Assembly (NCBI GenBank): GCA_002269645.1 | Contig: NIVC01000691.1 | Location: 1 to 64,000 of the forward strand | DNA: 64,000 bases | Reading direction: 5' to 3' | Origin: Macrostomum lignano | Lineage: Eukaryota | Shown: in pieces, positions 1,957-63,469 of the stretch | Layout: every line of letters starts with the position of its first letter | How positions within the stretch are numbered: the first letter of the stretch is position 1 | Translations under genes and position numbers: made by a program | Notes under the pieces: generated by a model | Database searches by the model: none | What the model was told of the DNA's origin: nothing | What the model saw: the letters and a program-made list of their open reading frames with translations, nothing else

Positions 1957-9471
<7,515 letters not shown>

Positions 9472-35239: not shown

Positions 35240-35873
<634 letters not shown>

Positions 35874-36275
35874 AAGGACATTCCAATTTGATTTATGCGA
35901 TAGAAAACCAGTTTCCAACTCCGCCTCATCACTCTGCCTAATTCTGTTGAAGATTTTAAGTCGCTTGCGAAAAGGCCTCCTCATGGGGGAATTAGTTGAC
36001 TATTAACAGCCAGCACAAGCCGATGCCCCGAGCAGCAAGCCCGTATCACTGCTGTTTCAACGGGAGCCTCCCAGGCTTCTGGGCAGGGACATTTCCAAGG
36101 GGATTTTGCTATCGCGTAAGGGCGCGGCTATAAAATTCTATGTGGAAGCGGCTGCATCCGGCATATTTTTGATTCGAGGGCGGCCGCGGCTTGTCAGCCT
36201 CAAGCTACCCGCGGGAAGGATTTGCCTGGGCGGCCCAGTTTTTCTGGGATAGAAATATGTAAGCCTAAAATACAT

Positions 36276-36793
<518 letters not shown>

Positions 36794-39560: not shown

Positions 39561-39608
39561 CCTTCCGAGACTGCCCACCCTAACTCCTGAAAAGATTGAC
39601 AGACTCAC

Positions 39609-40573: not shown

Positions 40574-42732
40574 GTGCCAGTTGGGCAAGTTGCCGACTTT
40601 CTCTCTAATCCGAGAGTGCTGGTTTGGTTTGGTTGAAAACTTGCCAAGCCCAGAACGTCGCGTCGCAAAGAATACAGATCAGAACGTCAATTTGAAGGCT
40701 CTTCAGTTTGCAAGCCGATTCAAGGCCGCTGGTTGGCTGTGCGAGAGAGGGGTCAGCCTTTCATGTCTGTTAATTGGGAATAGGAATCTGCCCGGTTCTG
40801 ATTGGCTAGGAGTTGATTTTGGGAGTAAGGAAATGGCTGGAGTGGCCTAAGTATGATAAAGTAACAGATAAATTACCCAGCAGCAAAGAGTTTTGCATAC
40901 GTAAATGCTGAATACTTTTCTGGAGTCCATAATGAAGTGTAATTATTAAACAGACGCTGGTCAAAGCAAAAATCAATCAACTTATTAAAATATAAGCATC
41001 TTTTAACAGAAAAATACCCGTGTAACCAAATCAACATGGTAGTCTGGCCTCTATAAAGGCCTTTTAAAAACCCTATTAAACAATCTTAATTTCCCTAGAG
41101 GAAAACTTAGTGTCGCCAATGCAAGACATGACAAATCATGGCCCACTGCAATGTCCTCATATGCCCTGATGAGTCGCGATAATCTTGCTGACAAATAACG
41201 ACCGATAAATTTCAGACTAACCGTGAACTTTTTTAAACTCCTAATTTAAAAGCCAGCCAGCGCCAGCAAAGATGCATCGCTTTCAACTTTGCCATTTTAA
41301 AGAACCAAGCTAACGAAAACGCAGTTAAAGTACGGTAAAGATAAGTGAACAGAGTATCGAGTTCCCCAATTAGACTGGCGAGAGGCGCAGACCCTGTTTT
41401 ACAATTTTGTTTAAATTCGAAAACAAGGAAAGAGCATTTTACCGGTATGGCTGTTGCATGGACCCAACTTTAATGGCTACTGGCCAGAAGCCTGGCTAAA
41501 CAAGACTGCAACATGCTCTGCCGTTTTTATGATCTAACGAGTATATTTATGACAGGGCCCAGACGGCCTCTTCGTGTTTACCAAAATATCAAGAGAAAAT
41601 ACAAAAATCTGGTATACCGGTGCCTGGGAGCACCGGTACGCAAGGCAAACATCCTGGGGTTTTCTTCTTCTTCTAGAAAGTTCTTAAACTTCAGCGGTCA
41701 AGTCTGGACAAGTCTTGACAGTTGCCAAGCGAGTCAATGGGCCAACAGTCAGGCTAGCCAGCTGCCTCCAGTGCGCGTCATCATTCATGCGGCTCTCGGT
41801 GTTGCATCCACCAACCAGACTGCAAGCTGTCTGATATTAGCGCTGCCTGAGATATCTGCCACCATCGGAGGCAGCGAACTGACAAGTTGTGAAAGGTAAC
41901 ACAACGCAGCAAAACTGAAGCAACAAGCCGGCTTAGGATAGAGGAGGAAAGTCGAGGAAAGAATGGGAAAAAATTTGCAGTTGTTAGTGTGTTGCTTTTT
42001 TGGGGTGTTTTTTCTTCAACTGCGGCATGACAGATTCTGGACAGGGAGCGGGGCACAGGCAGGCTGACGGATTCGAGGTTAATAAGAGACTTTCGCAGCG
42101 GGGAAAAGAGAGGAGGCGTCCTCAGCGACGCGACAGTCGTGAATAAGCTAACGACCTGAAGGAATCGAGAAGCTGGCTAAGCTGCACTGACATTGCAGGG
42201 CTTCCCTTGCGTGGCTCAGGACTGCGGACTGGTTTTGGCCAGTCACCAGCTGCACGCTGCCCGCGACGCAGCTCCCTTCTCTTGTTTTCTCTTCTGCAAG
42301 AGATGAAGAAAGCAGATTTCGCCAGGAAAAATTTATAGTTAGCTAGCTGTCCTGCCGAAAGCTGCAAAAGTGAATACGCCATTTTTTTCAACATTCCACA
42401 GATCAGATTTTTGACCTCTGGCATTGTTTATATATAAGTTATTGTTTATAATCTACTAGTGTAATCGAATTCCGCTGTTCTATTTCTGGGATTTAAAGAT
42501 CGTGTCGAGTTTGAATATTTACGAAATCCAAGCCGATGCAGAGAATTTCGATTTTCTGTCGCGATCAAATTTCAGCGCATCGACAAGGCAGGCCTCAGAA
42601 GGAATCGAACTTTTTTCAGAGTTCAATTTAGCGTGCTGATATTCATCTGGATAATTTCTTATTTGATGGTTCGAAGTGGATTCTTGTTATAAAAACCGCG
42701 TCTCTATGTGGGCAAGAAAAGAAAGTGCTCAG

Positions 42733-42883
<151 letters not shown>

Positions 42884-43239
42884 AGAAAGCAAGAAACAGA
42901 AAGAGACTGCCAGAGAAGAGCAAACAATGGCTTAAGAAGGGGTTGCAACTCGTTGGCATCCTTGAGGTATATAGAAGGCTAGACATTGAGGTTGTGCACT
43001 CTGTTTGCCATATAGGAGTCCTTCTTGACCTCAGAATTACAAATTTTGGTCTCTTAACCCCGTATGCTTCACCCCAATTTCTCTTTCCTTTTCTCTCTTT
43101 CTTACATGCAATCTTACAGTACTTTTAAAGAATGCAATTGTAGTTTAACAATCGAACATTATCCCACGATGTATTCTACTAGAAATACATTCGTGAGAAA
43201 ATGTGCTTGTGCATATGGTTCTGTCATAGACAATGTCCA

Positions 43240-44665
43240 AAACCATAGACATAATCCGCCATTGTCTGACTCCAGAACCATAGACACAATCTGCCATTGT
43301 CTGACTCCAAAACCAATACAGACACAATCTGCCATTGTCTGACTCCAAAACCAATACAGACACAATCTGCCATTGTCTGACTCCAAAACCATAGACACAA
43401 TCTGCCATTGTCTGACTCCAGAACCATAGACACAATCTGCCATTGTCTGACTCCACAACCATAGACACAATCTGCCATTGTCTGACTCCAGAACCAATAC
43501 AGACACAATCTGCCATTGTCTGACTCCACAACCATAGACACAATCTGCCATTGTCTGACTCCACAACCATAGACACAATCTGCCATTGTCTGACTCCACA
43601 ACCATAGACACAATCTGCCATTGTCTGACTCCAGAACCAATACAGACACAATCTGCCATTGTCTGACTCCACAACCATAGACACAATCTGCCATTGTCTG
43701 ACTCCACAACCATAGACACAATCTGCCATTGTCTGACTCCACAACCATAGACACAATCTGCCATTGTTTAACTCCATAACCATAGACACAATCTGCCATT
43801 GTCTGACTCCAGAACCATAGACACAATCTGCCATTGTCTGACTCCACAACCAATACAGACACCATCTGCCATGTCTGACTCCAGAACCAATACAGACACA
43901 ATCTGCCATTGTCTGACTCCACAACCAATACAGACACAATCTGCCATTTTCTGACTCCGGAACCAATACACACACAATCTGCCATGTCTGACTCCAGAAA
44001 CAGACACAATCTGCCGTTGTCTGACTCCAGAACCATAGACACAATCTGCCATTGTCTGACTCCACAACCAATACAGACACAATCTGCCATTGTCTGACTC
44101 CGGAACCAATACACACACAATCTGCCATGTCTGACTCCAGAAACAGACACAATCTGGCATTGTCTGACTCCAGAACCATAGACACAATCTGCCATTGTCT
44201 GACTCCACAACCAATACAGACACAGTCTGCCATTGTTTAACTCCATAACCATAGAAACAATCTGCCATTGTCTGACTCCAGAACCATAGACACAATCTGC
44301 CATTGTCTGACTCCACAACCAATACAGACACAATCTGCCATTGTTTAACTCCATAACCATAGACACAATCTGCCATTGTCTGACTCCAGAACCATAGACA
44401 CAATCTGCCATTGTCTGACTCCACAACCAATACAGACACAATCTGCCATTGTTTAACTCCATAACCATAGACACAATCTGCCATTGTCTGACTCCAGAAC
44501 CATAGACACAATCTGCCATTGTCTGACTCCACAACCATAGACACAATCTGCCATTGTCTGACTCCACAACCAATACAGACACAATCTGCCATTGTTTAAC
44601 TCCATAACCATAGACACAATCTGCCATTGTCTGACTCCAAAACCATAGACAAAATCTGCCATTGT
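43240..44665. repeat. Satellite with 35-bp and 39-bp unit variants
   Basis: GACACAATCTGCCATTGTCTGACTCCAGAACCATA and the ...ACCAATACA variant. Confidence 0.95.
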
Positions 44666-45287
44666 GGAAGTCTATGACCATGCAATTTCATAGAATTCAT
44701 GGAGATATTGTGAAATATCGTCAGTTTGATGCTGCGAGCGTAAAAACGAAAAATGACTTTCTATATTTTGGTGATTAATTTTTCAATTGAGAATGGGTCT
44801 CTAGTGAAATTCACACAATTCAGAAATTTAGGATTCAGTATTTCGCTGTCAACCGCTTCTTTCACTTTCGTTAGTCAGGCAACCGACGAAGAAAAACCGC
44901 TACAGAGAGCCCCCTCTGTTCGTGACAGACTGCAGAACCGGGCCAATTACTATTTTGTCGAGTTTTATATTTCAAACACAACATGCAGCCAGAATCCAGT
45001 TCGGCATGTCGAATATTCATTACTACAGTTGCTATATACCAAATGATGAGTTGCTTAAATTCTGTCTACACGTGACTTCAAGGCGAAATTATATTCAGAA
45101 TGAAACATATAGGCCTACTATTGGGAAATATTTACGCTTTGAATAATAAAGACAGTTGCAAGGTTTTATAAGGGGCACATGGACAGTGAGAAAGGAAGAA
45201 TTCTGTAGAGCACATATATAGACACTAAAATCTCGTTTGCAATGCCATCGTGGGAAGCCAACTTTTAATAATTGAAAGTCAGCCAGC

Positions 45288-46217
<930 letters not shown>

Positions 46218-49043
46218 TACAAACTCTGAATACGGACAGGCCTGGCGGAAAAGACACACAGGATGACAGTATATCAAATAACTGCATATGACAAGAGACT
46301 TACAAAGGGTGCCGCTGTATATAGAGACTCACAAAGATTCGATAGCATAGTATTTACAGAAGTGCGAGAGTCGTTGATTCAAAAGATTGAAAACGAAGAA
46401 CCATGGCTGCCCTGTGAGACAGGGAGGCAGATTCTGAGGCAGAAGAAAAGCATCATCCAGCTGCATGTCTGCATGAGACGAACACAGAGTTTTCGCCTTC
46501 ATCTAACCGTCCCAGCAGCTATCGGATGCCCTTCGGGGACTCAAAAGGCAGGGCATGCAGAGCAGAACCAACCAACTATCTGGCAGCAGTCCAGAAGGGA
46601 TTGAAGACAATCGATATGCCTGTGCAGTCCCAGGCCAAGGAGATCTGGAACTAAGAGTCTGGAATAGCAGCTATAGGCGAGCAGAAAGGCGAATTGCTGT
46701 GCCTGATTACAATTTTTATTGTTGTGAATCAAATTTTAAAACATTCCGAAATCTCAACAAAGAAAACACATGAGATTTTTAAATAAAATTTAAAATTAAG
46801 TTTTTATTTTAAACTTAAATTCAAAATTTTAAGCGATTTTTTCCGTGAGATTAACTGCAAAACAAGGAATTGTTTTTATTGACGGATTTTATCTGATGGT
46901 GCAGCTTCCAGCTGGTATTCCAGTTTCTTAGTTCTAGAATTCCTTGGCACAGATTTCTTCCAACTGAAATCTCTTATATAGCCAAGCCCCATAGCCTGTC
47001 TACTCCACCAGTCTTAATGGCAAGAGCGCGAGTTTATGAGAGAATTTTGAATATCAGCATGTGGCTGCTGCTGGTGGATGCTATAAATTGATAGATAGAA
47101 GTTTCTCTACTTGTCTCTATATTAGGCATTTAACAATCTCCCTTAGAAAGTATTGATTCGGTTTCGAAGAAAACTGAGTTGTAGATTTATCAAACCCTGC
47201 GACTTTGATAATTAATAAACTAGAAAATTTAATAAATACATGTATTGATCAGAAACTATAAGCACTTCTCCCATGAGTGCCATTGCACTGAAAAAGTATA
47301 AGTCGCTTTCTGATCGAATACAATAAACAAAAACAGTTCAATATCCTATAGTAGTCCTTATTTTAGACAAGCATTCGGTCTAAAAATAGTAAATATATTT
47401 CTTAAACTAGCTTTCATAAAAAAATTGATTCCATTTGGAAAACATATCGTAACTATTCTATAGTAGTATGAAGTAATTACTTAAAAAATTATTTGTTGTC
47501 AAAAGAGCCGATACACGACAAGATAATTATCTTTAACCAATAATAAAACTTGTGATTGGTGACCATTAATAAACATTTGTTTCATGCTTTGCTTTTTTTA
47601 AATGCAAAAAGTGCGCAGCAGAACACAGAAAATTTACAGATTATGCTTCGTTTTTCCTTTCTAATTGGTAGTTTAAATTAAAATTTGCGCGTAAGCTACT
47701 GTTTGGATGGAGAAAATGAATATAAGTAGTATGTCCCGTAGACAATTTCAAACTGGATCAACAACATACACGGCTATTAGTAAATTTTTTTGCAAGGTCT
47801 GGTGTATATGTAGCTTGTAGTCTTGTTATTGCCATAGCAAGACTCCTGTTTTTCTTTTATACTGTACTGTATGTACTGTAATAAAAGTTTTGGTTCGTTT
47901 CTGTATAAAGTACATGATACAAACTGAACTATAAATTTTCAAAGTTAAGCACATCTTATTTGCCTTTATTAAATCTCTTCAACCATCGAGTCTTTTTGGC
48001 GTCACCGGGATTAAGAGGCTGACATAACCTTAATACTGTACATGTCTCCTTTGAGATCTTCGTTGACACTTTGATTCTACTTATACAGTAGTATATACGG
48101 CATGTTTCCGATCTACTTCACTCTTTGAAAAATTCACCAAGTCTTGAAACACGCTTCTCAATATTCAGTTAAAAAACACTAGTCTCTGATCCTGACAAAA
48201 TTTGCGTTTATTTATACTAATCTTTTGGTCCGTTTAAAACAAAAATACATATGCATATGTAAAGCATTTTACGGTAAAATAAACAGAAAACTCCAAATAA
48301 ATATTTTGTATAATCATTACAACGTGCTTCGGCGTACTTTGACCATTCTTAATTTTGTTGTCTAAGGTTGAACAGAACTTATAGCATAATCACATGCTCT
48401 CGTACCACGACATTTCATTGCCCGCAGTGCCAGCTTTTTGCGCCACACTCTATACTGCCTACTTATTAGTAGGTGAACTCTGACAGAAGCTGCGACTCCC
48501 CAGTTCTCCCCCAGTCGGGAGCTCGCCGACTCGTGCTTTCGAGAGTAGCAGAAAAACACAAAAACTCAAGAATATTCGTAAAATTCATAGGAAAGCGTGA
48601 GATCATTCGAAAATAAATATAATTTCAGAGACAGATAAGGGCAGACAAAAATAGAATTTAACGAATTTAGGGCTACAAGGCGAGGCAAATGTGATTAAAC
48701 TTACATCAGGATTAGTAGTAGGAGGGTGGCGTACTTTGACACAGAGGAACTCAATGAGGGACTAAAAAACCGGAGGAGAAATGCGAATATGGTATTTAGC
48801 GTCCAGCTGAATTCTTTAAGCAAATAGCGATCGCACCTAATTCTTAGAATATGGTTCTTCCCCAGATAACTATTCAATACGAGGCAAACGGAATTCCCAC
48901 TCGTCAATATATAGTAAAATAAGAAATAAGAAGGCCAAAGTGCATTTGTGTCTAAAACTAATCGTGGAACGTTATTCAACAAAAATAGAGAAAAAAACTA
49001 CTAAGAAAAATATAGTGAATCCGTAGAAAAAGATAAATAATAC

Positions 49044-50166: not shown

Positions 50167-53100
50167 TTAATACATACATTTGTGTGGGTGTGACGAAGAG
50201 TAAATTATTCGCTTGCAAGTAGGACAGGCAAGATTCGAACATTGTTTGCACCAGAGGTACGAATGGCCTTTGCGTGCCGGTTTCAATCCGTGCCCACAAT
50301 CTCCAACCAACTGCCGACTTGAATTTTGCGGCAAATCCATAGGCACAGATTCACTGCGGAAATCACTTTCTTGACGATGACCAGCAGAAGCAACGGAAGA
50401 ACCAGGATTGCCGACCAACGATCGCAGGTGATTAACAGCAATTCTTCGCTTATAAACAGACCAGTTTGTCGATTTGCTTCCCCAGATGCAATCTTCTAAC
50501 CACTTTGCATGTTTTGAGCAGTCAGAAGTACGAGTACTTGCAAAAACGCATCTATAACATACCGGACACTGAATGTCGAACTTGTCACGGCATCCATCTA
50601 CCAGCTTACGAAAAACATAAGTGGAAAAGCAATATTGGCACAGAGAACAAGAGCATGTCGGAAAATCAATTTTGTAAAGTTGGTCTATGTCTAGACGGCA
50701 GTTCGAACAATAAAATTTAGAAGCATCATCTTTGACAGCGGCAGATGGATCAGAAAAGCCCTTCAATCGCCTCCAGATAGACAGCTCGTGATCGAAGCGT
50801 TCAAGGATTGATGCCGATTCTGCCCCACCAAGCATACTTTGAATTCGAAGCCGTGCAAATTCGTAATGCTCATTCTCGATTCTTTTCTCAATAAAAGCAC
50901 GCGAACAGAAGCAAATAAAGTCACCGAGAACAAAATAATTGCGTCCGATTGCTTTCCAGAAGCAGTCCACGCATATTTTGCAGCCACAAACTTTTACTTC
51001 AAACGGATCAGTCTCCTCAACCTTGCGTCGGCATTTACAGCAAGTAAAAGAGACCACTAGTTCCGAACTTTCTGGCACAAATCCAATTTCCGTGGCGCTA
51101 TTTGAGAATTCAGTTGGCCTGGCAGATGTACCATTTACTTGGTCCGATGCAGCTCTGCAAGCTTGCTCATAGGAAAGGCCGTGATCCCTCATAAGTTTAT
51201 CAATTCTATCGTCAATTTGATGTCGCTGAAAATAAACTTCAGTAAGTGACATATTCCTTCCAACGCTCAAATGACTTGCCGGTTGGATTTCAAAACTGCA
51301 CACTTCACAAAAAGTGGCAGTTAATGAGTTTTTTAAAGTACACTGCGGACACTGAACAGCTTCTAAAGTTTCAGCATCGGTACCACCATCCGGCACACTG
51401 CTCGTTGCAGACTGCGCATCAGTGTTTCTAGCAGCAGCTTCATGACCTGCAGAATCACCGCTTCTATAATAATGAGCAGTTTCAGCTCCACAGAGAGGTC
51501 TGTTGTAATCATTAGCGACAGCTCCACCACTTGAATACTCGGGGGGCTGGGATCCTGCCGAAGAAGCACCTTGAATAGGAACAGCATCAAGCCGTTCATC
51601 ACAACCTTTACACTTTACTGAATGCGAGTCGTTCAGCAATGTGCATTTTACACACAGGACTTTGCCGGTAGAAGCCTTGACGCTCTCTACAACATTCGCC
51701 AGGCTGCTGGTCTTCGAGCACACTTGGCAGGTAAGGCGATAATTTTTTGTCGTGTCAGAGTTACAGCTGAACTCATTCATTGTAGTGCAATGAGCACATG
51801 TCCAAGTTAGACCAGTCACCTGGACTGGGTTGTGACGGCTGACGTATAAGCCTTCTTTCGTTTGGTTGACAGAAAAAACACGTTGAACCATTACTGGCTG
51901 GCCAGAATCGCGTTCTCTTATCGGCTGGCCACAATTGCGTTCTCTCATTGGCTGGCCGAAATTGCGTTTTCGCGATGGCTGGCCAGAAGCGCGCTTTTTC
52001 TTTGGCTGGTCAGAATTGCGTACTCTCATTGGCTGACCAGAATCGCATTCTCTCATTGGCTGACCAGAATAGCGCTCTCCAATTGGCTGGCCAGAATCGC
52101 ACTCTCTCATTGGCTGGCTAGAATCGTGTTCTCTCATTGGCTGGCCAGAATCTCGTTCTCTCATTGGCTGCCCAGAATCGCGTTCTCTCATTGGCTGACC
52201 AGAATCTCGTTCTCTCATTGGCTGGCCAGAATCGCGTTCTCTAATTGGCTGGCCAGAATCGCGCTCTCCAATTGGCTGGTCAGAATTGCACTCTCTCATT
52301 GGCTGACCAGAATCTCGTTATTTTATTGGCTGGCCAGAATCGCGCTCTTTAATTGGCTGGTCAGAATTGCGCTCTCTCATTGGCTGGCCAGAATCGCATT
52401 CTCCTATTAGCTGTCCAGAATTGCTTTTTCTCATTGGCTGACCGGAACTTTCAATGTGCATCTCACAAACAGTGACAGTTAATGGATTTTCTAAAGTACA
52501 TCTCGGGCACTGACCGGCTTCTAAAGTACCACCATCAGTACATCCATTCAGCCCATTGCTTGTTGCAGACTGTACATCAGAGGTATCGTCCCACTCGTCC
52601 AGCAACTGAAGCATTCTGTTAGTCTCGTCAACTCCGATCTCAGACTCCAACTCGAGCACTTGAATCTTCATCAACTCGCGAGCCTCAAAATCGCCAGTCC
52701 ACGCCACTCCGCACACCTGACATTCCAAGCGGCTGGGCAGAGATCGCACGAAGCTGCCAAAACAAGCTGAGCACAGCTCACAGCCGCAGCTACTCATGCT
52801 AGTCAGCTTCAGTTGTGGCATCTCATTGTTGCACTTGCTGCACCTGCATTTCAGCTTGCTAAGCAGCTCAGCAATGTCAAAGCAGGCAAAATCGCTGTTC
52901 TGAATCGCATTGATGAGATCAGAGTCGTTGAACTCTTTGAACTCGACCAGATCTTTGAGCTGGTAGAATCGCTCAGCCACGACTGGGTCGCAGCGGTCCA
53001 ATGCAGAGGGCAGCTTCAGCTCCACAACCTTATGATTCAAGTCTCCGTGACGCAGCTGGTAACACAGTCTGCACATGAAGCCGTAACGACACTCGGCATC

Positions 53101-53169
53101 GATGCACTTGAAGCTGCCAGTGTTGCGAAAGCAGATGTGGCACAGACTTGGGCCAGCTCGAGCGGCCAT
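50167..53169 (-). pseudogene. RNF31/HOIP-derived zinc-finger gene C (B-box, UBA-like, RING, partial NZF, 9-aa repeats, 3 NZF, 2 RING-like, IBR-like tail); one in-frame TAA splits it into 283-aa and 710-aa ORFs
   Basis: ORFs 53169-52318 and 52299-50167 are in the same frame. The junction reads AAA TAA CGA GAT TCT GGT CAG CCA ATG, where the repeat consensus is GAA/GAG (K-E-R-D-S-G-Q-P-M). It could be a pseudogene, two genes, or a base error. Confidence 0.7.
51895..52445. repeat. Coding 27-bp tandem repeat (about 21 units, MRERDSGQP)
   Basis: Unit TCTCATTGGCTGGCCAGAATCGCGTTC; each unit contains CAGCCAAT on the coding strand. Confidence 0.92.
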
Positions 53170-53361: not shown

Positions 53362-56300
53362 TTCACGTCTCTCATACCGCAACATTTCTTTGCCCACAGC
53401 GCAAGCTTTTTGCGCCACACTCTATACTGTCTACTTATCAGTAGATGAACTCTGGCAGAAGCTGCGACTCCATTAGTGGGAGCTCCGACTCGTGCTTTCG
53501 AGAGTAGCAGAGGAACACAATAACTCAAGAATACGCTCGTAGTCGTGAAAGTGATAGTAAAGAGCGCGATTTTTTTGAAAATAATATCTATTTTTCAGAG
53601 AAAGGTCAGGGCAGAAAAATAGAATGTAACGAGTATAAGGGCTACAAGGTGAGGCTGGTGTGATCAAAATTACATCTGGGTAAGGAGATGGTGTGCTTTG
53701 GCGCTGAGGAACTCAATAAGGGACTCAAAAGCTAGATGAAGAATACAAAAAGGGCACTTAGGGCGTTGGGCTGATATCGGTCCTCCAAGCTTAATTAGCA
53801 CTTTTATGAACAGATTTTAGTGACACAGGTACGAAAGATAACACCTACTACTTAGAATATGGTACTTTCACAGAGAATTAATATGATCGGCAGATACAAT
53901 TCCTACGCGTCAATATATTGCAAAATGAGAAGGACAAAACGCATTTGTGTCTAAAATACATAATGCAACGTTTTTTTAAATAAAAATAGAAAAAACTACT
54001 GCTAATAAATCTATAGTGGATATAGGAAAACGATAAATAATATCTATTTTACTGCGTGAAGTCTCACCAGGGACAGGCACTGTAACAGAACACTAGGCTT
54101 AGAATAAAAAAAGGAACAATTCCTCTGGATAAAAATTTTCACACAGCCGACAAGTAGGCATTAATCGATTATACAACACATATGAATTATTTACTACAAT
54201 ATAACGCGCATCTCACGTATTTAAAAAATAAGTCTCATTTATAACAACAAGGCGTTTAATTAAAGTTGACCAACACTCAAAAAGCAACAAATTCAAACAA
54301 CGTGCCGATAATGTTCGTAGAAATGAGAAAATAATAACAAACTAATTATACTTCAAATTGCATTAGAAATTAATTATAGAAACTTGCTTTCGTTACATAA
54401 GAAAGGTTTTCTCAAGTTTTTGCAAAAAAATGGTTCATTTAGTGCTAGCCATTTGCGCATGATCAATTGAAAGTTGTTGTTAGGCCAAGCCAAAGGAACT
54501 CACAGATCAAAGAGAGAGTTTGGGTTAAAGACGGCTTAAATTGAGGCTTTGACGCCAAAACTGATAGGGGATGCTGATATTTTAGGCTGGATAGCAGGCT
54601 TTGGGGGCTGATTATTTTTTTGCTTTAACATCGTTTACTTAATAAGATATAACTATACAGAGTAGAAGCTTACATGTTTTTTAGTTTAAATATTTCATTC
54701 ATTATTTGATTATAGAAGCTATAAAGTTACCAATAGAATAACAACCGATATATAGCGAGTTCTTAGATAAGTAATCAAAATATAACATTGCTTATTAAAT
54801 ATCATGCATGCACAGTATATGTGTTCAAGTGATCACATCACAAGTATCTAGTCTTAAAAGTTAATACATACATTTGTGTAGGAATTTCGAAGTGTAAATT
54901 AGTCGCTTGCAAGTAGGACAGGCAAATTTGACACATTGAATGCACCAAAGGTAGCCGTTGTTTGCCGGTCTCAATCCGTGCCCACAATCTCCAACCAACT
55001 GCAGACTTGAATTTTGCGGCAAATCGCGATGCAAATATTCACTGCGGAAATCACCTAGACGAAGACCGCCAGAAGCAACAGAAGAACCAGGATTGCCGAC
55101 CAACGATAGCAGGTGATTAACAGCAATCCTTTGCTCATTAACAGACCAGAATGTTGGTTTGTGTCCCCAGATGCAATCTTCCAACCACGTAGCATGTTTT
55201 GAGCAGTCAGAAGTAATAGAAAAAAAGCATTTATAACAGACTGGACAACTTAGTTCATACTTGTCACGGCATCCATTGACCAGCTTGCGAACAACATAAG
55301 TGAAGAAGCAATCTTGGCACAGAGAACAAGAGCATGTCGGAGGATCAATCTTCTCAAATTGGTCTTTGTCTAGACGGCACTTCGAACAAGAAAATTTAGA
55401 AGCATCTTTGACAGCGGCAGATGGATCAGGAAGGCCCTCCCGTTGCCTCCAGTCAGACAGCCTCTGGTCGAAGCGCTCAAGGATGGACGCCGATTCTGCA
55501 TCACCGAGCTTTTGGCGAATTTGAAGCCGTGCGTCATCGTAATGCTCATTCTGATCTATTTTCACAAAACAAGCGCGTGAACAGTAGCAAAACAAGTCAC
55601 CAAGGTAAAAACCATTGTTTTCTATTAGTTTAATTGTTTTCCAAAAACAGTCCACGCATATTTTGCAGCCGCAAACTTTTATCTCAAACGGATCAGTCTC
55701 CTTAAACCTAAACTTGCATTTACAGCAAGCAAAAGAGACCACTGGTTCCGAGTTTTCTTGCACAATTCCAGCCATTTCTGTGGCGCTACTTAAGAATTCA
55801 GTTGGCCTGGCAGAAGTACCATTTATTCGGCCCGATACAGCTCTACAAGCTTGCTCATAGGAAAGGCCGTGATCCCTAATAAGTCTATCAACTGTATCGC
55901 CCATTTGTTGTCGCTCGAAATCAACTTCACCAGGTGACCTATTCCTTCCAACGCTCAAATGACTTGCCGGTTGGATTTCAAAATTGCACACTTCACAAAA
56001 ATTGGCAGTTAATGAGTTTTTTAAAGTACACTGCGGACACTGAACAGCTTCTAAAGTTTCACCATCAGTACCACCATCCGGCACACTGCTCGTTGCAGAC
56101 TGCGCATCAGTGTTTCTAGCAGCAGCTTCATGACCTGCAGAATCACCGCTTCTATAATAATGAGCAGTTTCAGCTCCACAGAGAGGTCTGTTGTAATCAT
56201 TAGCGACAGCTCCACCACTTGAATACTCAGAAGGCTGGGATCCTGCCGAAGAAGCACCTTGAATAGGAACAGCATCAAGCGGTTCATCACAACCATCACA

Positions 56301-56790
56301 TTTTACTGAATGTGAGTCGTTCAGCAATGTGCATTTTACACACAGGACTTTGCCGGTAGAAGCCTTAATGTTCTCAACGATATCCGTCAGGCTGCTGGTC
56401 TTCGAGCACACTTGGCAGGTAAGGCGATCATTTTTTGTTTTGTCAGAGTTACAGTTGAAGTCATTCTTTGTCGTGCAATGAGCACATGTCCAAGCTAGAC
56501 CAGTCGCCTGGCCAGGATTGTGACCGCTGACGCTTAAGTCTACATTCGCCGGGTCGACAGGATTAACATGTTGACCTCTGATTGGCTGGTCAAAATCGCA
56601 TTCTCTCATTGGTTGGCCAGAATCGCGCTCTCTCATTGGCTGGCCAGAATCACGTTCTATCGTTGGCTGGCCAGAATCGCGTTCTCTCATTGGCTGGCCA
56701 TAATCGCGTTTTCTCATTGGCTGGCCAGAATCGCGCTCTCTCATTGGCTGGCCAGAATCGCGCTCTCTCATTGGCTGACCAGAATCACGC
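53362..56790. repeat. Segmental duplication copy 2 carrying most of HOIP-like gene B and its 3' flank
   Basis: Direct repeat of 48390-52445; lacks the MITE. Confidence 0.9.
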
Positions 56791-57020
56791 TCCTTCGTTA
56801 GAAAGTTAGATTGACGCCCGTCACTCGATAGTCCAGAGTTTAAACCTGTATGAGTCGCATTTTGCTGAATATCAATTCGTTGATGATCTTTCCTGGCAGG
56901 ATGTCCATGCCAAATGTTATCGCAGCTTAAGCACAGCCGCTTCCTACTGCAACTAGCAACGGAGCACTCTTTTTCCGCTGGGTCGTCGCCGCAAAATTGG
57001 CACGGCTCGGGTTCTGACAT
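54861..57020 (-). CDS. RNF31/HOIP-derived zinc-finger protein B, single exon, 719 aa (HOIP-type B-box, 8 x 9-aa repeat, 3 NZF, 2 RING-like, IBR-like tail; no RING2/LDD)
   Basis: ATG at 57020 (the ORF track starts at an upstream TTG). B-box CQFCGDDPAEKECSVASCSRKRLCLSCDNIWHGHPARKDH. NZF-like motifs WTCAHCTTKN...CQVC, CVKCTLLN...CDGC and CPQCTLKN...CEVC. RING-like CSKCRLD...CSCSLCQDC...CPVC. Confidence 0.85.
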   Translation of the reverse strand: MSEPEPCQFCGDDPAEKECSVASCSRKRLCLSCDNIWHGHPARKDHQRIDIQQNATHTGLNSGLSSDGRQSNFLTKERDSGQPMRERDSGQPMRERDSGQPMRKRDYGQPMRERDSGQPTIERDSGQPMRERDSGQPMRECDFDQPIRGQHVNPVDPANVDLSVSGHNPGQATGLAWTCAHCTTKNDFNCNSDKTKNDRLTCQVCSKTSSLTDIVENIKASTGKVLCVKCTLLNDSHSVKCDGCDEPLDAVPIQGASSAGSQPSEYSSGGAVANDYNRPLCGAETAHYYRSGDSAGHEAAARNTDAQSATSSVPDGGTDGETLEAVQCPQCTLKNSLTANFCEVCNFEIQPASHLSVGRNRSPGEVDFERQQMGDTVDRLIRDHGLSYEQACRAVSGRINGTSARPTEFLSSATEMAGIVQENSEPVVSFACCKCKFRFKETDPFEIKVCGCKICVDCFWKTIKLIENNGFYLGDLFCYCSRACFVKIDQNEHYDDARLQIRQKLGDAESASILERFDQRLSDWRQREGLPDPSAAVKDASKFSCSKCRLDKDQFEKIDPPTCSCSLCQDCFFTYVVRKLVNGCRDKYELSCPVCYKCFFSITSDCSKHATWLEDCIWGHKPTFWSVNEQRIAVNHLLSLVGNPGSSVASGGLRLGDFRSEYLHRDLPQNSSLQLVGDCGHGLRPANNGYLWCIQCVKFACPTCKRLIYTSKFLHKCMY
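56570..56790. repeat. Coding 27-bp tandem repeat (8 units), same family as 51895-52445
   Basis: Same unit; encodes RERDSGQPM in gene B. Confidence 0.92.
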
Positions 57021-57287
57021 GCTTTGCAAGGTTTCAGGAAGGTATTAACTTTTATTATAGAGGCTATGGTTTTTTAAGAAAAGCAACGAAAAAATGTTAT
57101 TAACTGTACCATGCATAGAGACTACTCCAGTGTATTTTATGACATCACTACTAGTACTCTGATGGAGATAGGCTAATTACCTAAATATATAAGACAAGCG
57201 TATAACTGGAATGTTTCTGTTCTGACTATTAGTGCTTCTGGCAGTTAGTGTCAGAAGGCTTGCGATCAGATGCTAAGGCTCATGGGG

Positions 57288-59994: not shown

Positions 59995-62943
59995 CTAAAC
60001 CAGAGTTACTTTCATTTTGCTACTCCGCAGAGGTGGCACCGTTTTCTTCAGCCGCTCGCGATAAATTCTCACCTTCTCTCTCGCAGCAGAAGCAGGGTTG
60101 GAGGCGTTGACTTTCGGCAGGGCCAAACCAAACCTTCTGAACATCTCCAGCAGCTCATTTTCATTGGCAACATCTACCAAATCAAGCGCGTTTGCATTGA
60201 TGAGCTGAATTAGATACTCACGGTAGTGCCTGTCACATATACCTGGCTTGTTATGAGTAACTTTTTCGGTACAAGGACAGATTGTCAACTTTCCGTCCAT
60301 CTTCAAGTCAGGAAGCTCACAAGCTTTGCCAAACTTTGACCACACGTCGCTCACTTTGATCTTACTTTTCTTCAGCAAATCAAGTAGAGTCGTCTGTTTC
60401 ACTTGCTTCAAATTAAAGTAGCACTGGCGATGGTGGTGCACATGAAGTCCCTTAATCGGGCAGAAGTCGTGTGGTCTAATCTGAGGGCTTCGACAAAATG
60501 GACAGAATGAATGCCCACATCTGCAGTGAAACACAGGAACTCCAGATTTGGACACGCGTTGGTAGCAATGATTGCAATTTGGGCAAACCAAATCAAAAGT
60601 CAGAAGCTCCATCATCTGATCGTGCAGCTTTGCGTCAGTAGGCGAGAGGACTTGCTTCTGGGCAGCTACGTGCATTTTATTATCTCGTTTTTGACGAATG
60701 CGTGCTGCATGAACACGATAACTGTTGCAGTCCATCCGATAGTGATCAGTCCAGAACCCGAAGCATTGCTTGCAGACATCCTGTTTGCAATGTTTGCAGT
60801 AAATTTCGGACTGCCGAGTGTCCCTTTTCGGTAGTCCACTATTCCCATGGGGACAATAACCATTCGAAGTGTTTGATGGAACTGTCGAGGCATCTTTTGA
60901 GGCTTTTGGTTTTTTTCTTTTCGTGCCTGGGGCTTCGACCACTTCCCAACCTTCGTCGCTATTTTGGCTTGAATTATCTTCAAGGTGCGCCACTGCATAC
61001 TCCACAGTGTCAGAGCCAAGCACATCCGCCATTTCCATCAGCTGCATCCTCATGAAATCCCGACTGTCTTCATCATCGCACACACCCTGGCAGACAGGGC
61101 ACTGAATTCTGCTGCTTTTCAGATCAAGAAGAAATTTCCGAAAACACTCTGGACACATCTGGCACTCGCATGCTGCCATGGCAACAAGTTTGTGACGCGG
61201 TAACTCATTCGAACAGCGGTTGCACTTGCGACGCAGTTGGCTCATCAGAGCATAGTCTTCGAACGCCAGGCCGCCACACGACTCAATCGCAATCGCAAGG
61301 TCCGATTCAGAAAACTCTTTAAACTTGGGCATGCTTTTGACAACCAGAATTCTCTCTGCTACCCAGTCTTCCACTCTGAGCTGCGAAGCCAGGTTTTGAG
61401 CTCTATCGGACCATTCGGTAGAATCGCTTCCAGCCGCTCCGACTGCATCACTGGCGGCTGCTGCGGCTGCGGAGGTCAGCATGGACGCTGCAGCAACGGC
61501 TTCACTGCGAGCGACTGCGCCTCCTTTAGTGGCGCCGCCACTGAGTTCGGTAGTCTGTGAGCAAGCAGAGCAAATTGCAAGGCTATTTTCTGGCTGCGAT
61601 GGAGCCGGGTTCACCAGCGTGCAGTGCTTGCAGACCCAGTTGCCATCACTTTGAGAATTGTTTTCTTGGAAATTTTGAGAGGCTACTTTTGACGGAATAT
61701 TTGTTGCATGATGCTCATGTAGTTGCCGATTCTGTTCTTGCTGTTGCTCTCTCTGCTGCTGCTCTCTTTGCTGTTGCTCTTTCTGCTGCTGCTCTCTTTG
61801 CTGTTGCTCTCTCTGCTGTTGCTCTCTCTGCTGTTGCCCTCTCTGCTGTTGCTTTCTCTGCTGTTGCTCTCTCTGCTGTTGCTTTCTCTGCTGTTGCTCT
61901 CTCTGCTGTTGCTCTCTCTGCTGTTGCTCTCTCTGCTGTTGCTCTCTCTGCTGTTGCTCTCTCTGCTGTTGCTCTCTTTGCTGCAGCTCTCTCTGCTGTT
62001 GCTCTCTTTGCTGCAGCTCTCTCTGCTGTTGCTCTCTCTGCTGTTGCTCTCTCTGCTGTTGCTCTCTCTGCTGTTGCTCTCTCTGCTGTTTCTCTCTCTG
62101 CTGTTGCTCTCTCTGCTGTTGCTCTCTCTGCTGTTGCTCTCTCTGCTGTTGCTCTCTCTGCTGTTGCTCTCTCTGCTGTTTCTCTCTCTGCTGCTGCTCT
62201 CTCTGCCGTTGCTGAAGATTATTGAGATACCGTCTCTGCTGCTCATAAGAATCATTTGCTCTATCTTGACCTTGAAATTGACCTTGCTGATTTTTTACGT
62301 CTAAAAGTGAATTCTGGTGCGCATTCTTATTGCTTTTAAAATCTTGGTCACTACCATTAGTATCTGTACGGCCAACACTGTGAGCAGCATTGCCAGGCTT
62401 CTGATGAGCCGGTGCCCGAGAATCGAATGTTCCGCTCGATCCTCGATCAGACTCGCCAGGCGAAAGAGCTGACGAATAAGAAGCAGACTGAGCGGAACCA
62501 CCAGGTACTGTCGGTTTAGCAACACCTGTGCCAGAGTTTGGCCAATTATTGTTGCTACCCGCAGGAGGACTGGCTTCCTTCAACTCAATCGGAGGTGCTC
62601 CATCACTCTTGCCACAAACGCTGCATATCCTTCGCGTAGAATCCTCGTTGATGAAAGTGCAGAATTGGCACTGCCAGCCACCGCTGCTGCTAGAAGCAGG
62701 TGGCGGAGATGTTGGTTGAGGCGGTGGCGGTCGTTTTGGCGGCGTGCGGCCTGACTGGGGAGATCGTGAAGGACCAGCGGCCGGCCCGGGCTGGTAGGGT
62801 CTGGTCTGGTGATTTTTCCGATTCGGATGGTTGTGCCAAATCTGGTCGCAGCTTTTGCACAGCAGATTCCGGCTGCAGCCGGCTGTTTCGCACTGCACTT
62901 CGGCTGGGTAATCGCCACAAAAGCTACAGTCTACTGTAGCCAT
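59995..62943 (-). CDS. RNF31: RNF31/HOIP (LUBEL-like) RBR protein A, single exon, 982 aa; predicted catalytically dead
   Basis: B-box CSFCGDYPA...CKSCDQIWHNHPNRKNH; NZF WQCQFCTFIN...CSVC and WVCKHCTLVN...CSAC; UBA-like region; RING1 CNRCSNELPRHKLVAMAACECQMCPECF...CPVC (HOIP as recalled: CAVCGWALPHNRMQALTSCECTICPDCF); IBR; RING2 CPNC...FHCRCGHSFCPFC; LDD HHHRQCYFNL...GICDRHYREYLIQLINANALD (HOIP: GLCQAHYKEYLVSLINAHSLD). No PUB domain seen. Confidence 0.9.
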   Translation of the reverse strand: MATVDCSFCGDYPAEVQCETAGCSRNLLCKSCDQIWHNHPNRKNHQTRPYQPGPAAGPSRSPQSGRTPPKRPPPPQPTSPPPASSSSGGWQCQFCTFINEDSTRRICSVCGKSDGAPPIELKEASPPAGSNNNWPNSGTGVAKPTVPGGSAQSASYSSALSPGESDRGSSGTFDSRAPAHQKPGNAAHSVGRTDTNGSDQDFKSNKNAHQNSLLDVKNQQGQFQGQDRANDSYEQQRRYLNNLQQRQREQQQREKQQREQQQREQQQREQQQREQQQREQQQREKQQREQQQREQQQREQQQREQQQRELQQREQQQRELQQREQQQREQQQREQQQREQQQREQQQREQQQRKQQQREQQQRKQQQRGQQQREQQQREQQQREQQQKEQQQREQQQREQQQEQNRQLHEHHATNIPSKVASQNFQENNSQSDGNWVCKHCTLVNPAPSQPENSLAICSACSQTTELSGGATKGGAVARSEAVAAASMLTSAAAAAASDAVGAAGSDSTEWSDRAQNLASQLRVEDWVAERILVVKSMPKFKEFSESDLAIAIESCGGLAFEDYALMSQLRRKCNRCSNELPRHKLVAMAACECQMCPECFRKFLLDLKSSRIQCPVCQGVCDDEDSRDFMRMQLMEMADVLGSDTVEYAVAHLEDNSSQNSDEGWEVVEAPGTKRKKPKASKDASTVPSNTSNGYCPHGNSGLPKRDTRQSEIYCKHCKQDVCKQCFGFWTDHYRMDCNSYRVHAARIRQKRDNKMHVAAQKQVLSPTDAKLHDQMMELLTFDLVCPNCNHCYQRVSKSGVPVFHCRCGHSFCPFCRSPQIRPHDFCPIKGLHVHHHRQCYFNLKQVKQTTLLDLLKKSKIKVSDVWSKFGKACELPDLKMDGKLTICPCTEKVTHNKPGICDRHYREYLIQLINANALDLVDVANENELLEMFRRFGLALPKVNASNPASAAREKVRIYRERLKKTVPPLRSSKMKVTLV
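61735..62205. repeat. Coding 15-bp tandem repeat (QQREQ, about 30 units) in HOIP-like gene A
   Basis: Plus-strand unit CTGTTGCTCTCTCTG. Confidence 0.95.
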
Positions 62944-63180: not shown

Positions 63181-63469
63181 CAATTAGGCCAGATGTGCAA
63201 CCGACATCTCAGCCGCAGCTATTGCGCGGCGCATCTGAAGGCTGCGTACGGCTGTACAGTACAAGGACCTGGGGGGTTACTCCACACTCCCTCAATTACA
63301 CACTGAATTACCCTAGCTAATGCTGGCACCTATTTTACAGCTGGGTGAACTGAAGCAATGCAGAGCTGAGTTTCTTGCTCAAGGACACAAATCCCCCCGA
63401 GTAGGTCGAGAATCGAACCCCCGACCTTTATCTCGTGCGTCCGACGCTCTATAACCACGAGGCTACAAC
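63181..63469 (-). mobile_element. tRNA-derived SINE, more complete copy
   Basis: The minus strand begins with A-box-like TAGCCTCGTGG and B-box GGTTCGATTCT. The body (CAGCTGGGTGAACTGAAGCAATGCAGAG; GCCAGATGTGCAACCGACA...TGCGTACGGCTGT) is shared with 30808-31061. Confidence 0.75.

What the first reader, a model, noticed from the sequence alone, without database searches (positions are those of the whole stretch)
60405..60580. HOIP-like gene A is a predicted pseudo-ligase: catalytic Cys and His both replaced by Val
Seen: RING2 reads CPNCNHCYQRVSKSG-V-P-V-FHCRCGHSFCPFC, with Val codons at 60540-60538 and 60534-60532; the later motif is HHHRQC. Known (human HOIP, from memory): CPKCKFSYALARGG-C885-M-H887-FHC and HHPR935D936C, where C885 forms the ubiquitin thioester, H887 is the general base, and R935/D936 position the acceptor ubiquitin. 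Inference: it cannot catalyse RBR transfer, yet keeps its zinc ligands, the LDD and an intact 982-codon frame. This suggests selection for a scaffold or dominant-negative role. The Cys in NHCY is not at the catalytic position.
Basis: partly seen in the sequence, partly recalled or inferred. Interest (0 to 1): 0.8.

Follow-up and report, generated by a model that had tools for sequence, protein, structure and literature searches.

The report
Catalytically dead HOIP paralogue in flatworm
This flatworm (Macrostomum lignano) gene is a diverged copy of the linear-ubiquitin ligase HOIP that has lost all four residues needed for catalysis but is still kept as an intact protein next to normal HOIP copies, so it is most likely a natural "pseudo-ligase".

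Summary
The sequence observation is correct. ORF 59995..62943 (-), 982 codons, is a HOIP/RNF31 homologue from Macrostomum lignano. Val802 (60540-60538) and Val804 (60534-60532) sit at human C885 and H887.

HHHRQC corresponds to H925-C930. R935/D936 lie seven residues later, where gene A reads K846/Q847, so they are also replaced.

About 140 HOIP-family representatives are ~98% Cys/His/Arg/Asp at these four positions. The main exceptions are this M. lignano subfamily and a second, distant M. lignano subfamily (Cys to Ala).

The gene lies in a tandem cluster of at least seven HOIP-like genes. The cluster includes canonical copies (C-M-H, FYLRD; 41% identical to human HOIP).

Evidence for retention:
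- Four intact ~1000-codon copies differ by 8.5-10% at the DNA level.
- 27 of 31 conserved Cys/His positions are kept and invariant.
- dN/dS is 0.4-0.6, against 0.15 for the canonical neighbour.
- The AlphaFold model matches HOIP RING2-LDD structures.

Evidence against: one copy has decayed, and constraint is weak.

Loss of catalysis is well supported. A scaffold or dominant-negative role is untested. New variant of a known kind; moderate interest.

The parts
59995..62943 (-). Gene A: single-exon 982-codon ORF for a HOIP/RNF31-like protein of Macrostomum lignano (start of contig NIVC01000691.1)
   Evidence: ORF list. 100% match on a 476,613-bp M. lignano contig. Window end overlaps L002 from that contig. 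HOIP RBR-LDD is the best PDB match, E=1.6e-17.
62803..62928 (-). N-terminal B-box-like zinc domain (aa 6-47)
   Evidence: Weak Pfam PF22586 hit, E=0.0023, below the curated cut-off. The motif is shared with genes B and C and with P0092.
62605..62682 (-). NZF-type zinc finger 1 (GGWQCQFCTFINEDSTRRICSVCGKS), with the T-F ubiquitin-binding signature
   Evidence: Weak matches to HOIP NZF chains 7tv4_K (E=0.01) and 4owf_G. The T-F/hydrophobic signature is read from the sequence and interpreted from my own knowledge of Npl4-type NZFs.
61735..62211 (-). Low-complexity (Q-Q-Q-R-E)n repeat, about 160 aa; a homologous repeat occurs in the 1325-aa active-type paralogue
   Evidence: Translation. 1325-aa ORF in L002.
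61555..61644 (-). NZF-type zinc finger 2
   Evidence: Pfam PF00641 E=0.0067, below cut-off. Aligns with the P0092 NZF.
61231..61410 (-). Four-helix domain directly before RING1; aligns with human HOIP ~640-696, not with the 564-615 UBA
   Evidence: AF2 pLDDT 90-97. Alignment with human, canonical 533-aa and P0092. No PDB sequence match.
61078..61230 (-). RING1, all eight Cys ligand positions kept (C574...C618)
   Evidence: PDB alignment to HOIP RING1. Foldseek 7v8f_B/7v8g_C TM 0.61-0.67. pLDDT ~90.
60868..60960 (-). Lys-rich insertion absent from other HOIPs, predicted disordered
   Evidence: Alignment. pLDDT 35-38.
60718..60861 (-). Degenerate IBR: 7 of 8 ligand positions kept. Human C802 is Gly700, with His699 next to it.
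   Evidence: No Pfam IBR hit. pLDDT 63-85.
60484..60591 (-). RING2 (Rcat) with zinc ligands C787, C790, C807, C809, C814, C817 but no catalytic Cys or His
   Evidence: No Pfam IBR_1 hit, whereas the canonical paralogue hits at 1e-15.
60538..60540 (-). Val802 (GTT) at the position of catalytic Cys885
60532..60534 (-). Val804 (GTG) at the position of general-base His887
60565..60567 (-). Cys793, a spare Cys specific to the subfamily (aligns with human S877)
   Evidence: Invariant in 5/5 subfamily copies. Other HOIPs have R/K/Q/S/V/H/T/W there.
60040..60483 (-). LDD (linear ubiquitin chain determining domain) fold
   Evidence: Pfam PF18091 E=2.4e-10, 40.8 bits against a cut-off of 23. AF2 model pLDDT 77, and Foldseek's top 18 hits are all HOIP RING2-LDD, 4ljp_A E=3.7e-13.
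60421..60438 (-). HHHRQC, equivalent to human H925-H926-P927-R928-D929-C930 (not R935/D936)
60403..60408 (-). Lys846-Gln847 at the positions of the acceptor-ubiquitin contacts Arg935-Asp936
   Evidence: Role of R935/D936 from PMC7125101.
59845..59850 (-). AATAAA, candidate poly(A) signal ~150 nt after the stop codon
   Evidence: sequence only.

Best explanation
Gene A is a lineage-specific, fast-evolving paralogue of the linear-ubiquitin ligase HOIP/RNF31. It lies in a tandem cluster of HOIP-like genes in Macrostomum lignano.

Shown: it keeps the HOIP domain order (B-box, NZF, repeat, NZF, helical domain, RING1, IBR, RING2, LDD) and the zinc scaffold. It has lost the RING2 nucleophile (C885 to V802), the general base (H887 to V804) and the acceptor-ubiquitin contacts (R935/D936 to K846/Q847).

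Inferred: it cannot accept ubiquitin from an E2 as a thioester at the canonical site, and it cannot orient an acceptor ubiquitin for Met1 linkage. It is therefore a pseudo-ligase.

Shown: the protein is still maintained. There are four intact ~1000-codon copies, the zinc ligands are invariant, and dN/dS is below 1 and lowest in RING2-LDD.

Inferred: it works through binding rather than catalysis. Possible routes are ubiquitin binding through the NZFs, E2~Ub docking on the well-kept RING1, and possibly association with the active paralogue that carries the same Q/E/R repeat. Through these it would modulate or compete with the canonical HOIP copies encoded a few kb away.
For: - Family membership. 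HOIP is the best PDB match. The best non-Macrostomum representatives are RNF31. Pfam finds the LDD at 2.4e-10. The AF2 models match HOIP RING2-LDD and HOIP RBR.
- Loss of catalytic residues. Alignment. Family-wide counts are C 139/141, H 139/141, R 139/141, D 137/141. The roles of these residues are given in PMC7125101.
- The loss is shared by every copy. The window, L001 and L004 copies read V-P-V, L002 reads Y-S-V, and the decayed L003 copy reads V-F-V.
- A second subfamily. P0092 has the same architecture and Ala at the Cys position. It is ~29% identical and sister to gene A with 100% bootstrap.
- Active copies nearby. A canonical 533-aa gene (AKGGCMHFTC, FYLRDF) hits human RNF31 at ~1e-85 with 41% identity.
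- Retention:
  - With 5% random substitutions only 2 of 2000 simulated ORFs stay open, while the copies differ by 8.5-10%.
  - The 27 retained Cys/His columns are invariant in all four copies, against 242 of 377 other columns (p=2e-5).
  - dN/dS is 0.50-0.61 over the C-terminal half and 0.40-0.60 in RING2-LDD, significantly below 1 (p=1.5e-4).
- Transcription. The GenBank gene models of the paralogues come from a transcriptome-based annotation (PMC5730564).
Against: - Constraint is weak. dN/dS is ~0.5, against 0.15 for the canonical neighbour. CDS divergence (8.5-10%) is no lower than that of the 800 bp upstream (5.8-9.2%).
- One copy (L003) has stops and frameshifts, so the family turns over.
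- No expression or protein data were found for this copy.
- No counterpart of the human HOIP UBA at 564-615 was detected.
- The IBR and RING2 are too diverged for Pfam, and the catalytic-loop region has modest pLDDT of 51-67.
- The invariant spare Cys793 leaves room for a relocated nucleophile.
- No activity was measured.
Confidence: 0.6

Rival explanations
1. Gene A and its copies are non-functional duplicates on the way to pseudogenes. Catalysis was lost after duplication made it dispensable. The open frames are a transient state in a birth-and-death family.
For: - dN/dS is ~0.5, three to four times that of the canonical neighbour.
- CDS divergence is about equal to that of the upstream flank.
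- The L003 copy is already broken.
- Neighbouring gene C in the window carries an in-frame stop.
- A Cys-to-Ser copy of another paralogue exists.
Against: - Four independent ~3-kb ORFs remain open at 8.5-10% divergence. Simulation gives about 0.1% survival at only 5%.
- The zinc ligands are invariant, p=2e-5.
- dN/dS is significantly below 1 and lowest in RING2-LDD.
- A ~29%-identical Cys-less sister subfamily with the same architecture shows long persistence after the loss.
Confidence: 0.2
2. Gene A is still an active ligase using a different mechanism. Either the nucleophile has moved to Cys793 (or the zinc knuckle has shifted and freed Cys787), or RING1 promotes direct E2-to-substrate transfer as in a classical RING E3.
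For: - Cys793 is invariant in all five subfamily copies and is never Cys in other HOIPs.
- In the L001 copy the first knuckle reads CPDKDCSLC. There, only the second and third Cys keep CxxC spacing, which hints at a shifted zinc site.
- RING1 is the best-conserved and most confidently modelled RBR part.
Against: - Cys793 lies next to the zinc knuckle, nine residues before the catalytic position.
- His887, Arg935 and Asp936 are lost as well, which is not expected if transfer chemistry were kept.
- From my own knowledge, RBR RING1 domains hold E2~Ub in an open, non-discharging state, and no RBR with a relocated nucleophile is known.
Confidence: 0.08
3. The Val codons are an assembly or sequencing artefact, or a mis-alignment of a normal HOIP.
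For: None found.
Against: - The same GTT-CCT-GTG codons occur in three separately assembled contigs, with variants in two more.
- The flanking FHC is identical to human, which fixes the register.
Confidence: 0.01

Closest known systems
Human HOIP / RNF31 (catalytic subunit of LUBAC; structures 4LJO, 5EDV, 6SC6)
   Same: RING1-IBR-RING2-LDD order, NZF fingers upstream, a helical domain before RING1, most zinc ligands, and the LDD fold. PDB phmmer E=1.6e-17. Foldseek TM ~0.7 to RING2-LDD.
   Different: C885V, H887V, R935K and D936Q. IBR C802 is lost. A Lys-rich insertion precedes the IBR and another insertion precedes RING2. No PUB domain and no 564-615 UBA were detected. It has an N-terminal B-box and a Q/E/R repeat. 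Only ~27% identity in RING2-LDD.
Canonical M. lignano HOIP paralogue, 533 aa (BOX15_Mlig033604; L001 5267..6868, L002 19444..21045), about 3 kb upstream of gene A in the cluster
   Same: Same cluster and strand. NZF, helical domain, RBR and LDD.
   Different: It keeps C-M-H and FYLRD. It is 41% identical to human RNF31 (E~1e-85), hits Pfam IBR, IBR_1 and LDD, and has dN/dS of 0.15. Gene A is ~30% identical to it in RING2-LDD and has dN/dS of ~0.5.
Engineered catalytically dead HOIP (C885S/A) used in LUBAC studies
   Same: A HOIP scaffold without the thioester-forming Cys. This is the laboratory analogue of what gene A is by nature (own knowledge; the role of C885 is in PMC7125101).
   Different: Gene A has in addition lost the general base and the acceptor contacts, and it has diverged throughout. 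It is a natural, duplicated gene rather than a point mutant.
M. lignano BOX15_Mlig012393g2 / Mlig019305g1 (P0092, P0162)
   Same: B-box, NZF, helical domain, RING1, Cys-less RING2 and LDD. Sister to gene A in the NJ tree with 100% bootstrap.
   Different: Ala at the Cys position with His retained. The IBR appears to be absent. ~29% identity. It sits at a different genomic locus.
Non-catalytic RING partners (BARD1, MDMX, BMI1/PCGF), which are known pseudo-E3s
   Same: Ligase folds retained without own catalytic output, acting as partners or regulators (own knowledge).
   Different: Those are RING-type proteins that never carried a catalytic Cys. Here a thioester-forming RBR has lost its nucleophile. 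No partnership has been shown for gene A.

Membership tests
HOIP/RNF31 (LUBEL) family | C-terminal LDD domain unique to HOIP (Pfam PF18091) | tested here: met
   PF18091 E=2.4e-10, 40.8 bits against a cut-off of 23. Foldseek's top 18 PDB hits are all HOIP RING2-LDD.
HOIP/RNF31 (LUBEL) family | Closest relatives are RNF31/HOIP proteins | tested here: met
   Best PDB hits are RNF31. Best representatives outside M. lignano are fish, bird and annelid RNF31.
HOIP/RNF31 (LUBEL) family | RING1-IBR-RING2 zinc scaffold | tested here: met
   RING1 keeps 8/8 ligand positions, the IBR 7/8 (C802 to Gly) and RING2 6/6. The whole-RBR model matches 6sc9, 6sc6 and 5edv. Caveat: Pfam IBR and IBR_1 models do not hit.
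HOIP/RNF31 (LUBEL) family | Catalytic Cys in RING2 (human C885) | tested here: not met
   Val802. The column is Cys in 139/141 other family segments.
HOIP/RNF31 (LUBEL) family | General-base His two residues after the Cys (human H887) | tested here: not met
   Val804. The column is His in 139/141.
HOIP/RNF31 (LUBEL) family | Acceptor-ubiquitin contacts Arg935/Asp936 in the LDD | tested here: not met
   Lys846/Gln847. The columns are R in 139/141 and D in 137/141. Role from PMC7125101.
HOIP/RNF31 (LUBEL) family | Ubiquitin-binding NZF fingers upstream of the RBR | tested here: inconclusive
   Two CxxC...CxxC fingers with W and T-F/T-L motifs. Only weak matches: 7tv4_K E=0.01 and PF00641 E=0.0067.
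HOIP/RNF31 (LUBEL) family | UBA that binds HOIL-1L/SHARPIN (vertebrate LUBAC assembly) | tested here: not met
   No counterpart of human 564-615 in the alignment. It is also absent from the canonical M. lignano 533-aa paralogue. No Pfam UBA_HOIP hit.
HOIP/RNF31 (LUBEL) family | Assembles Met1-linked ubiquitin chains | not testable with these tools
   Needs an in vitro ubiquitination assay.
Pseudoenzyme (pseudo-E3 ligase) | Homologous fold of an active enzyme family | tested here: met
Pseudoenzyme (pseudo-E3 ligase) | Essential catalytic residues replaced | tested here: met
   C885V, H887V, R935K, D936Q.
Pseudoenzyme (pseudo-E3 ligase) | Maintained by selection rather than decaying | tested here: met
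   Four intact copies against ~0.1% simulated ORF survival. Ligand invariance p=2e-5. dN/dS is 0.4-0.6, below 1 with p=1.5e-4. Constraint is weak and one copy has decayed.
Pseudoenzyme (pseudo-E3 ligase) | Expressed as RNA and protein | not tested
   Only indirect: the paralogues' GenBank models derive from a transcriptome-based annotation. No data were found for this copy.
Pseudoenzyme (pseudo-E3 ligase) | Demonstrated lack of activity | not testable with these tools
   Needs biochemical assay.

The most novel reading that the evidence does not exclude
Macrostomum lignano carries a tandemly expanded, rapidly evolving family of HOIP-derived proteins. At least two old subfamilies in it have given up catalysis (Cys to Val/Tyr and Cys to Ala) yet persist as proteins. 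This would be a natural pseudo-RBR family. Its members would regulate, antagonise or act as decoys for the linear-ubiquitin machinery encoded by the canonical copies beside them, in the manner of fast-evolving innate-immunity gene clusters.
Probability: 0.35. Interest if true: 0.7.

Novelty: new variant of a known kind. Interest (0 to 1): 0.5.

Why it matters
HOIP is the only ligase known to build Met1-linked (linear) ubiquitin chains. It is usually a single, highly conserved gene. In about 140 family representatives the four catalytic positions are ~98% conserved.

A genome that holds canonical HOIP copies side by side with retained copies lacking all four positions gives a natural separation of HOIP's scaffold and binding functions from its catalysis. 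It also suggests an undescribed layer of regulation of linear ubiquitination in a flatworm that is tractable by RNAi and transgenesis (PMC5730564).

It is also a practical warning for annotation. UniRef names the paralogue P0002 an 'RBR-type E3 ubiquitin transferase', although it cannot work as one at the canonical site.

I found no paper linking Macrostomum and HOIP.

Tried and rejected
- **Pfam on the full-length protein** gave no significant hit. Only the C-terminal fragment revealed the LDD.
- **Word-index homologue search with the full protein** was swamped by the QQQRE repeat. With the C-terminal part it found only one extra paralogue. The exhaustive representative search was needed.
- **Exact-sequence look-up of gene A** in assemblies and transcriptomes found nothing on record.
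- **Expression data.** I searched paper texts and the supplements of two M. lignano transcriptome papers for the paralogue IDs and found none.
- **AlphaFold coordinates.** I hoped to measure where Cys793 sits, but coordinates are not exposed. The 'another Cys at the active site' test stays open.
- **Pre-RING1 helical domain against PDB sequences:** no match. It aligns with human HOIP ~640-696, not with the human UBA at 564-615. I therefore dropped the idea that gene A sequesters LUBAC partners through that UBA.
- **Deep placement of the Cys-less clade** in the NJ tree is unresolved, with bootstraps of 6-34%. I do not claim which canonical paralogue it came from.
- **Assembly artefact or mis-alignment:** rejected.
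- **tRNA-like stretch upstream of gene A** (~63395-63465): not called by ARAGORN.
- **More RING2-LDD copies in the window:** none besides gene A.
Full report
**What is there.** The window is genomic DNA of the flatworm Macrostomum lignano. The 982-codon ORF at 59995..62943 (-) is 100% identical to a protein on a 476,613-bp contig of assembly GCA_002269645.1. The last 144 bases of the window overlap locus L002 from contig NIVC01000691.1. The window therefore appears to be the start of that contig. The ORF has no introns and is followed about 150 nt later by AATAAA.

**Check of the observation.** Every sequence statement holds.
- RING2 reads LVCPNCNHCYQRVSKSGVPVFHCRCGHSFCPFC.
- GTT at 60540-60538 is Val802 and GTG at 60534-60532 is Val804.
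- HHHRQC lies at 60438-60421.

phmmer against all PDB sequences gives human HOIP/RNF31 as the best match (5edv_A, E=1.6e-17). It aligns 'ksgVpVfhc' with 'rggCmHfhc'. The following F-H-C is identical in both, so the register is fixed.

One recalled item is wrong. With the 5edv numbering, the human motif HHPRDC is H925-C930. R935/D936 lie in FYLRDW, seven residues later. In gene A those positions are Lys846 and Gln847, at 60408-60403. PMC7125101 confirms three points: Cys885 is the active site, Arg935/Asp936 contact Glu16/Thr14 of the acceptor ubiquitin, and their Ala mutants are inactive.

**Is it more than chance?** An exhaustive HMMER search with the RBR-LDD part found 151 family representatives at 50% identity clustering. 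I extracted 141 RING2 segments outside the gene A subfamily. The counts at the four positions are:
- C885 column: Cys in 139.
- H887 column: His in 139.
- R935 column: Arg in 139.
- D936 column: Asp in 137.

The only other proteins lacking the Cys are a spider protein (Ser/Leu) and P0092, another M. lignano gene (Ala, His kept). Gene A thus departs from four ~98%-conserved functional positions at once.

**Family membership and fold.**
- Pfam finds the HOIP-specific LDD (PF18091, E=2.4e-10). It finds no IBR or IBR_1 match. The canonical M. lignano paralogue hits all three.
- An AlphaFold2 model of aa 745-982 (pLDDT 77, pTM 0.76) has HOIP RING2-LDD structures as its 18 best PDB matches (4ljp_A E=3.7e-13, TM ~0.7).
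- A model of aa 512-982 matches whole HOIP RBR structures and HOIP RING1.
- That second model shows a very confident helical domain plus RING1 (pLDDT 90-97), a disordered Lys-rich insertion, a moderately confident IBR, and a weakly confident catalytic-loop region.

Of 31 Cys/His columns shared by human HOIP and two canonical M. lignano paralogues, gene A keeps 27. The four lost are H738, IBR C802 (Gly, with a His next to it), C885 and H887.

**Context.** Gene A is one member of a tandem cluster on the minus strand. Read from L002 into the window, the order is:
1. A 1325-aa ORF with two RBR modules. The second is canonical (AKGGCLHFTC, FYLRDF).
2. A gene-A-type copy with Y-S-V.
3. A 667-aa gene with C-L-H.
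4. A canonical 533-aa HOIP (AKGGCMHFTC, FYLRDF).
5. A B-box fragment.
6. Gene A.
7. Genes B and C, which have B-box, NZF and RING1-like parts but no RING2-LDD.

The same arrangement recurs on two other contigs (L001/L003 and L004). This fits the known redundancy of this assembly (PMC5730564).

The 533-aa gene is a bona fide HOIP orthologue. It is 41% identical to human RNF31, at E~1e-85. Active-type enzymes are therefore encoded within a few kb of gene A.

**Is it maintained?** Four gene-A-type copies are intact: window 982 aa, L001 1011 aa, L004 ~998 aa and L002 1114 aa. A fifth, in L003, has stops and frameshifts.
- The intact copies differ by 8.5-10% at the nucleotide level over the non-repeat half.
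- About 5.2% of single substitutions in this CDS create a stop. After 5% random substitutions only 2 of 2000 simulated ORFs stay open.
- The 27 retained Cys/His are invariant in all four copies, against 64% of other columns (p=2e-5).
- Nei-Gojobori dN/dS is 0.64-0.80 in the N-terminal part, 0.56-0.68 in the middle and 0.40-0.60 in RING2-LDD.
- Over the C-terminal half dN/dS is significantly below 1 (p=1.5e-4). The canonical 533-aa gene gives 0.15.

Selection therefore acts on the protein, and most strongly on the 'dead' catalytic module, but it is relaxed.

The former catalytic positions themselves drift (V-P-V, Y-S-V, V-F-V), as expected once chemistry no longer matters.

A caution: CDS divergence is no lower than that of the 800 bp upstream (5.8-9.2%). 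The three cluster copies are also mosaics of blocks of different divergence. For example, the 533-aa CDS is identical between L001 and L004, while gene A differs by 9.75%. Gene conversion or unequal histories may distort the pairwise estimates.

**An older Cys-less lineage.** P0092/P0162 lie on other contigs. They have the same architecture, with the IBR apparently missing and Ala at the Cys position. They are only ~29% identical to gene A, yet group with it at 100% bootstrap. This suggests the nucleophile was lost well before the recent duplications and that Cys-less proteins persisted. Long-branch attraction cannot be excluded, and deeper nodes are unresolved.

**How it most likely works.**
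- Shown: it has a HOIP fold and zinc scaffold, lacks the nucleophile, base and acceptor contacts, sits beside canonical paralogues, and retains its ORF and ligands.
- Inferred: no thioester intermediate and no Met1-directed transfer, hence a pseudo-ligase acting through binding.
- Candidate surfaces are the NZF fingers (ubiquitin), the well-kept RING1 (E2~Ub), the remodelled LDD, and the Q/E/R repeat. The repeat is shared, with its flanking sequence, with the 1325-aa active-type paralogue.
- A dominant-negative role through LUBAC partner sequestration has no support. Neither gene A nor the canonical 533-aa protein has a counterpart of the human UBA at 564-615. From my own knowledge, that UBA binds HOIL-1L and SHARPIN.

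**Rivals.**
- *Decaying duplicate* (confidence ~0.2). It is favoured by the weak constraint and the broken L003 copy. It is disfavoured by ORF survival, ligand invariance and the old sister subfamily.
- *Still active through a relocated nucleophile or RING-type transfer* (~0.08). It is prompted by Cys793, which is invariant in the subfamily and never Cys elsewhere, and by the shifted CxxC spacing in the L001 copy. It is disfavoured by the simultaneous loss of His887, Arg935 and Asp936.
- *Artefact.* Excluded.

**Novelty and score.** I found no paper connecting Macrostomum with HOIP. A search for RBR pseudo-ligases returned only general human E3 surveys, which I did not open. I rate this a new variant of a known kind: a HOIP-family member by homology and fold that fails the catalytic membership criteria. 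Interest is moderate (0.5). The loss of catalysis is solid and unusual for this family, and the organism is experimentally tractable. Function, expression and inactivity are all unmeasured.

Noticed in passing
window 50167..53169 (-): HOIP-like gene C is split by a single in-frame stop inside its DSGQPMRER repeat (…SGQPIK*RDSGQP…). The corresponding gene on another contig (L001 19113..22262) is an intact 1049-aa ORF.
   Followed up: partly
window 54861..57029 (-) and 50167..53169 (-): Genes B and C carry a B-box, NZF fingers, DSGQPMRER repeats and RING1-like or IBR-like zinc modules. They have no RING2-LDD at all: tblastn with the canonical RING2-LDD finds only gene A in the window. They are a second kind of non-catalytic HOIP derivative in the same cluster.
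   Followed up: partly
L003 15882..16376: One copy of the 1325-aa-type paralogue has the catalytic Cys replaced by Ser (AKGGSLHFTC), with His and FYLRD kept.
   Followed up: no
L002 913..4890: A 1325-aa ORF holds two complete RBR modules. The first has C-L-H with HCHHGSEC and the second is canonical. They are separated by the same QQQRE repeat and flanking sequence as in gene A, which suggests exon or domain shuffling within the cluster.
   Followed up: no
P0092 / P0162 (BOX15_Mlig012393g2, Mlig019305g1; other contigs): A second Cys-less (Ala) HOIP-like subfamily in M. lignano. It has gene-A-like architecture and an apparently missing IBR, and is ~29% identical to gene A.
   Followed up: partly
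L001 / L004 / window cluster copies: Mosaic divergence between cluster copies. The canonical 533-aa CDS is identical between L001 and L004, while gene A 3 kb away differs by 9.75%. Window versus L004 is 88.8% identical over gene A but 96.7% over genes B and C. This points to gene conversion or recombination between homeologous or duplicated blocks.
   Followed up: partly
P0065 (Caerostris darwini GIX67345.1): A spider HOIP-like protein has Ser/Leu at the C885/H887 positions. It is the only non-Macrostomum representative lacking the Cys, and it may be a gene-model artefact.
   Followed up: no
window 30191..33644 (-) and 39605..40588 (-): Two Cys-loop ligand-gated ion-channel genes (Pfam Neur_chan_LBD 1e-48 and 5e-50, plus transmembrane exons).
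   Followed up: no
window 13665..14177 (+); 3303..8842 (-): A homeodomain exon (PF00046, 4e-21) and a run of filamin-repeat exons (PF00630).
   Followed up: no
window 35146..36869 and 43145..46277: Kilobase-scale microsatellite or short tandem repeat blocks that produce long spurious ORFs on both strands.
   Followed up: no
window ~63395..63465 (-): A tRNA-like stretch (…GGTTCGATTCTCGACC…) upstream of gene A, possibly a tRNA-derived SINE. ARAGORN calls no tRNA there.
   Followed up: partly
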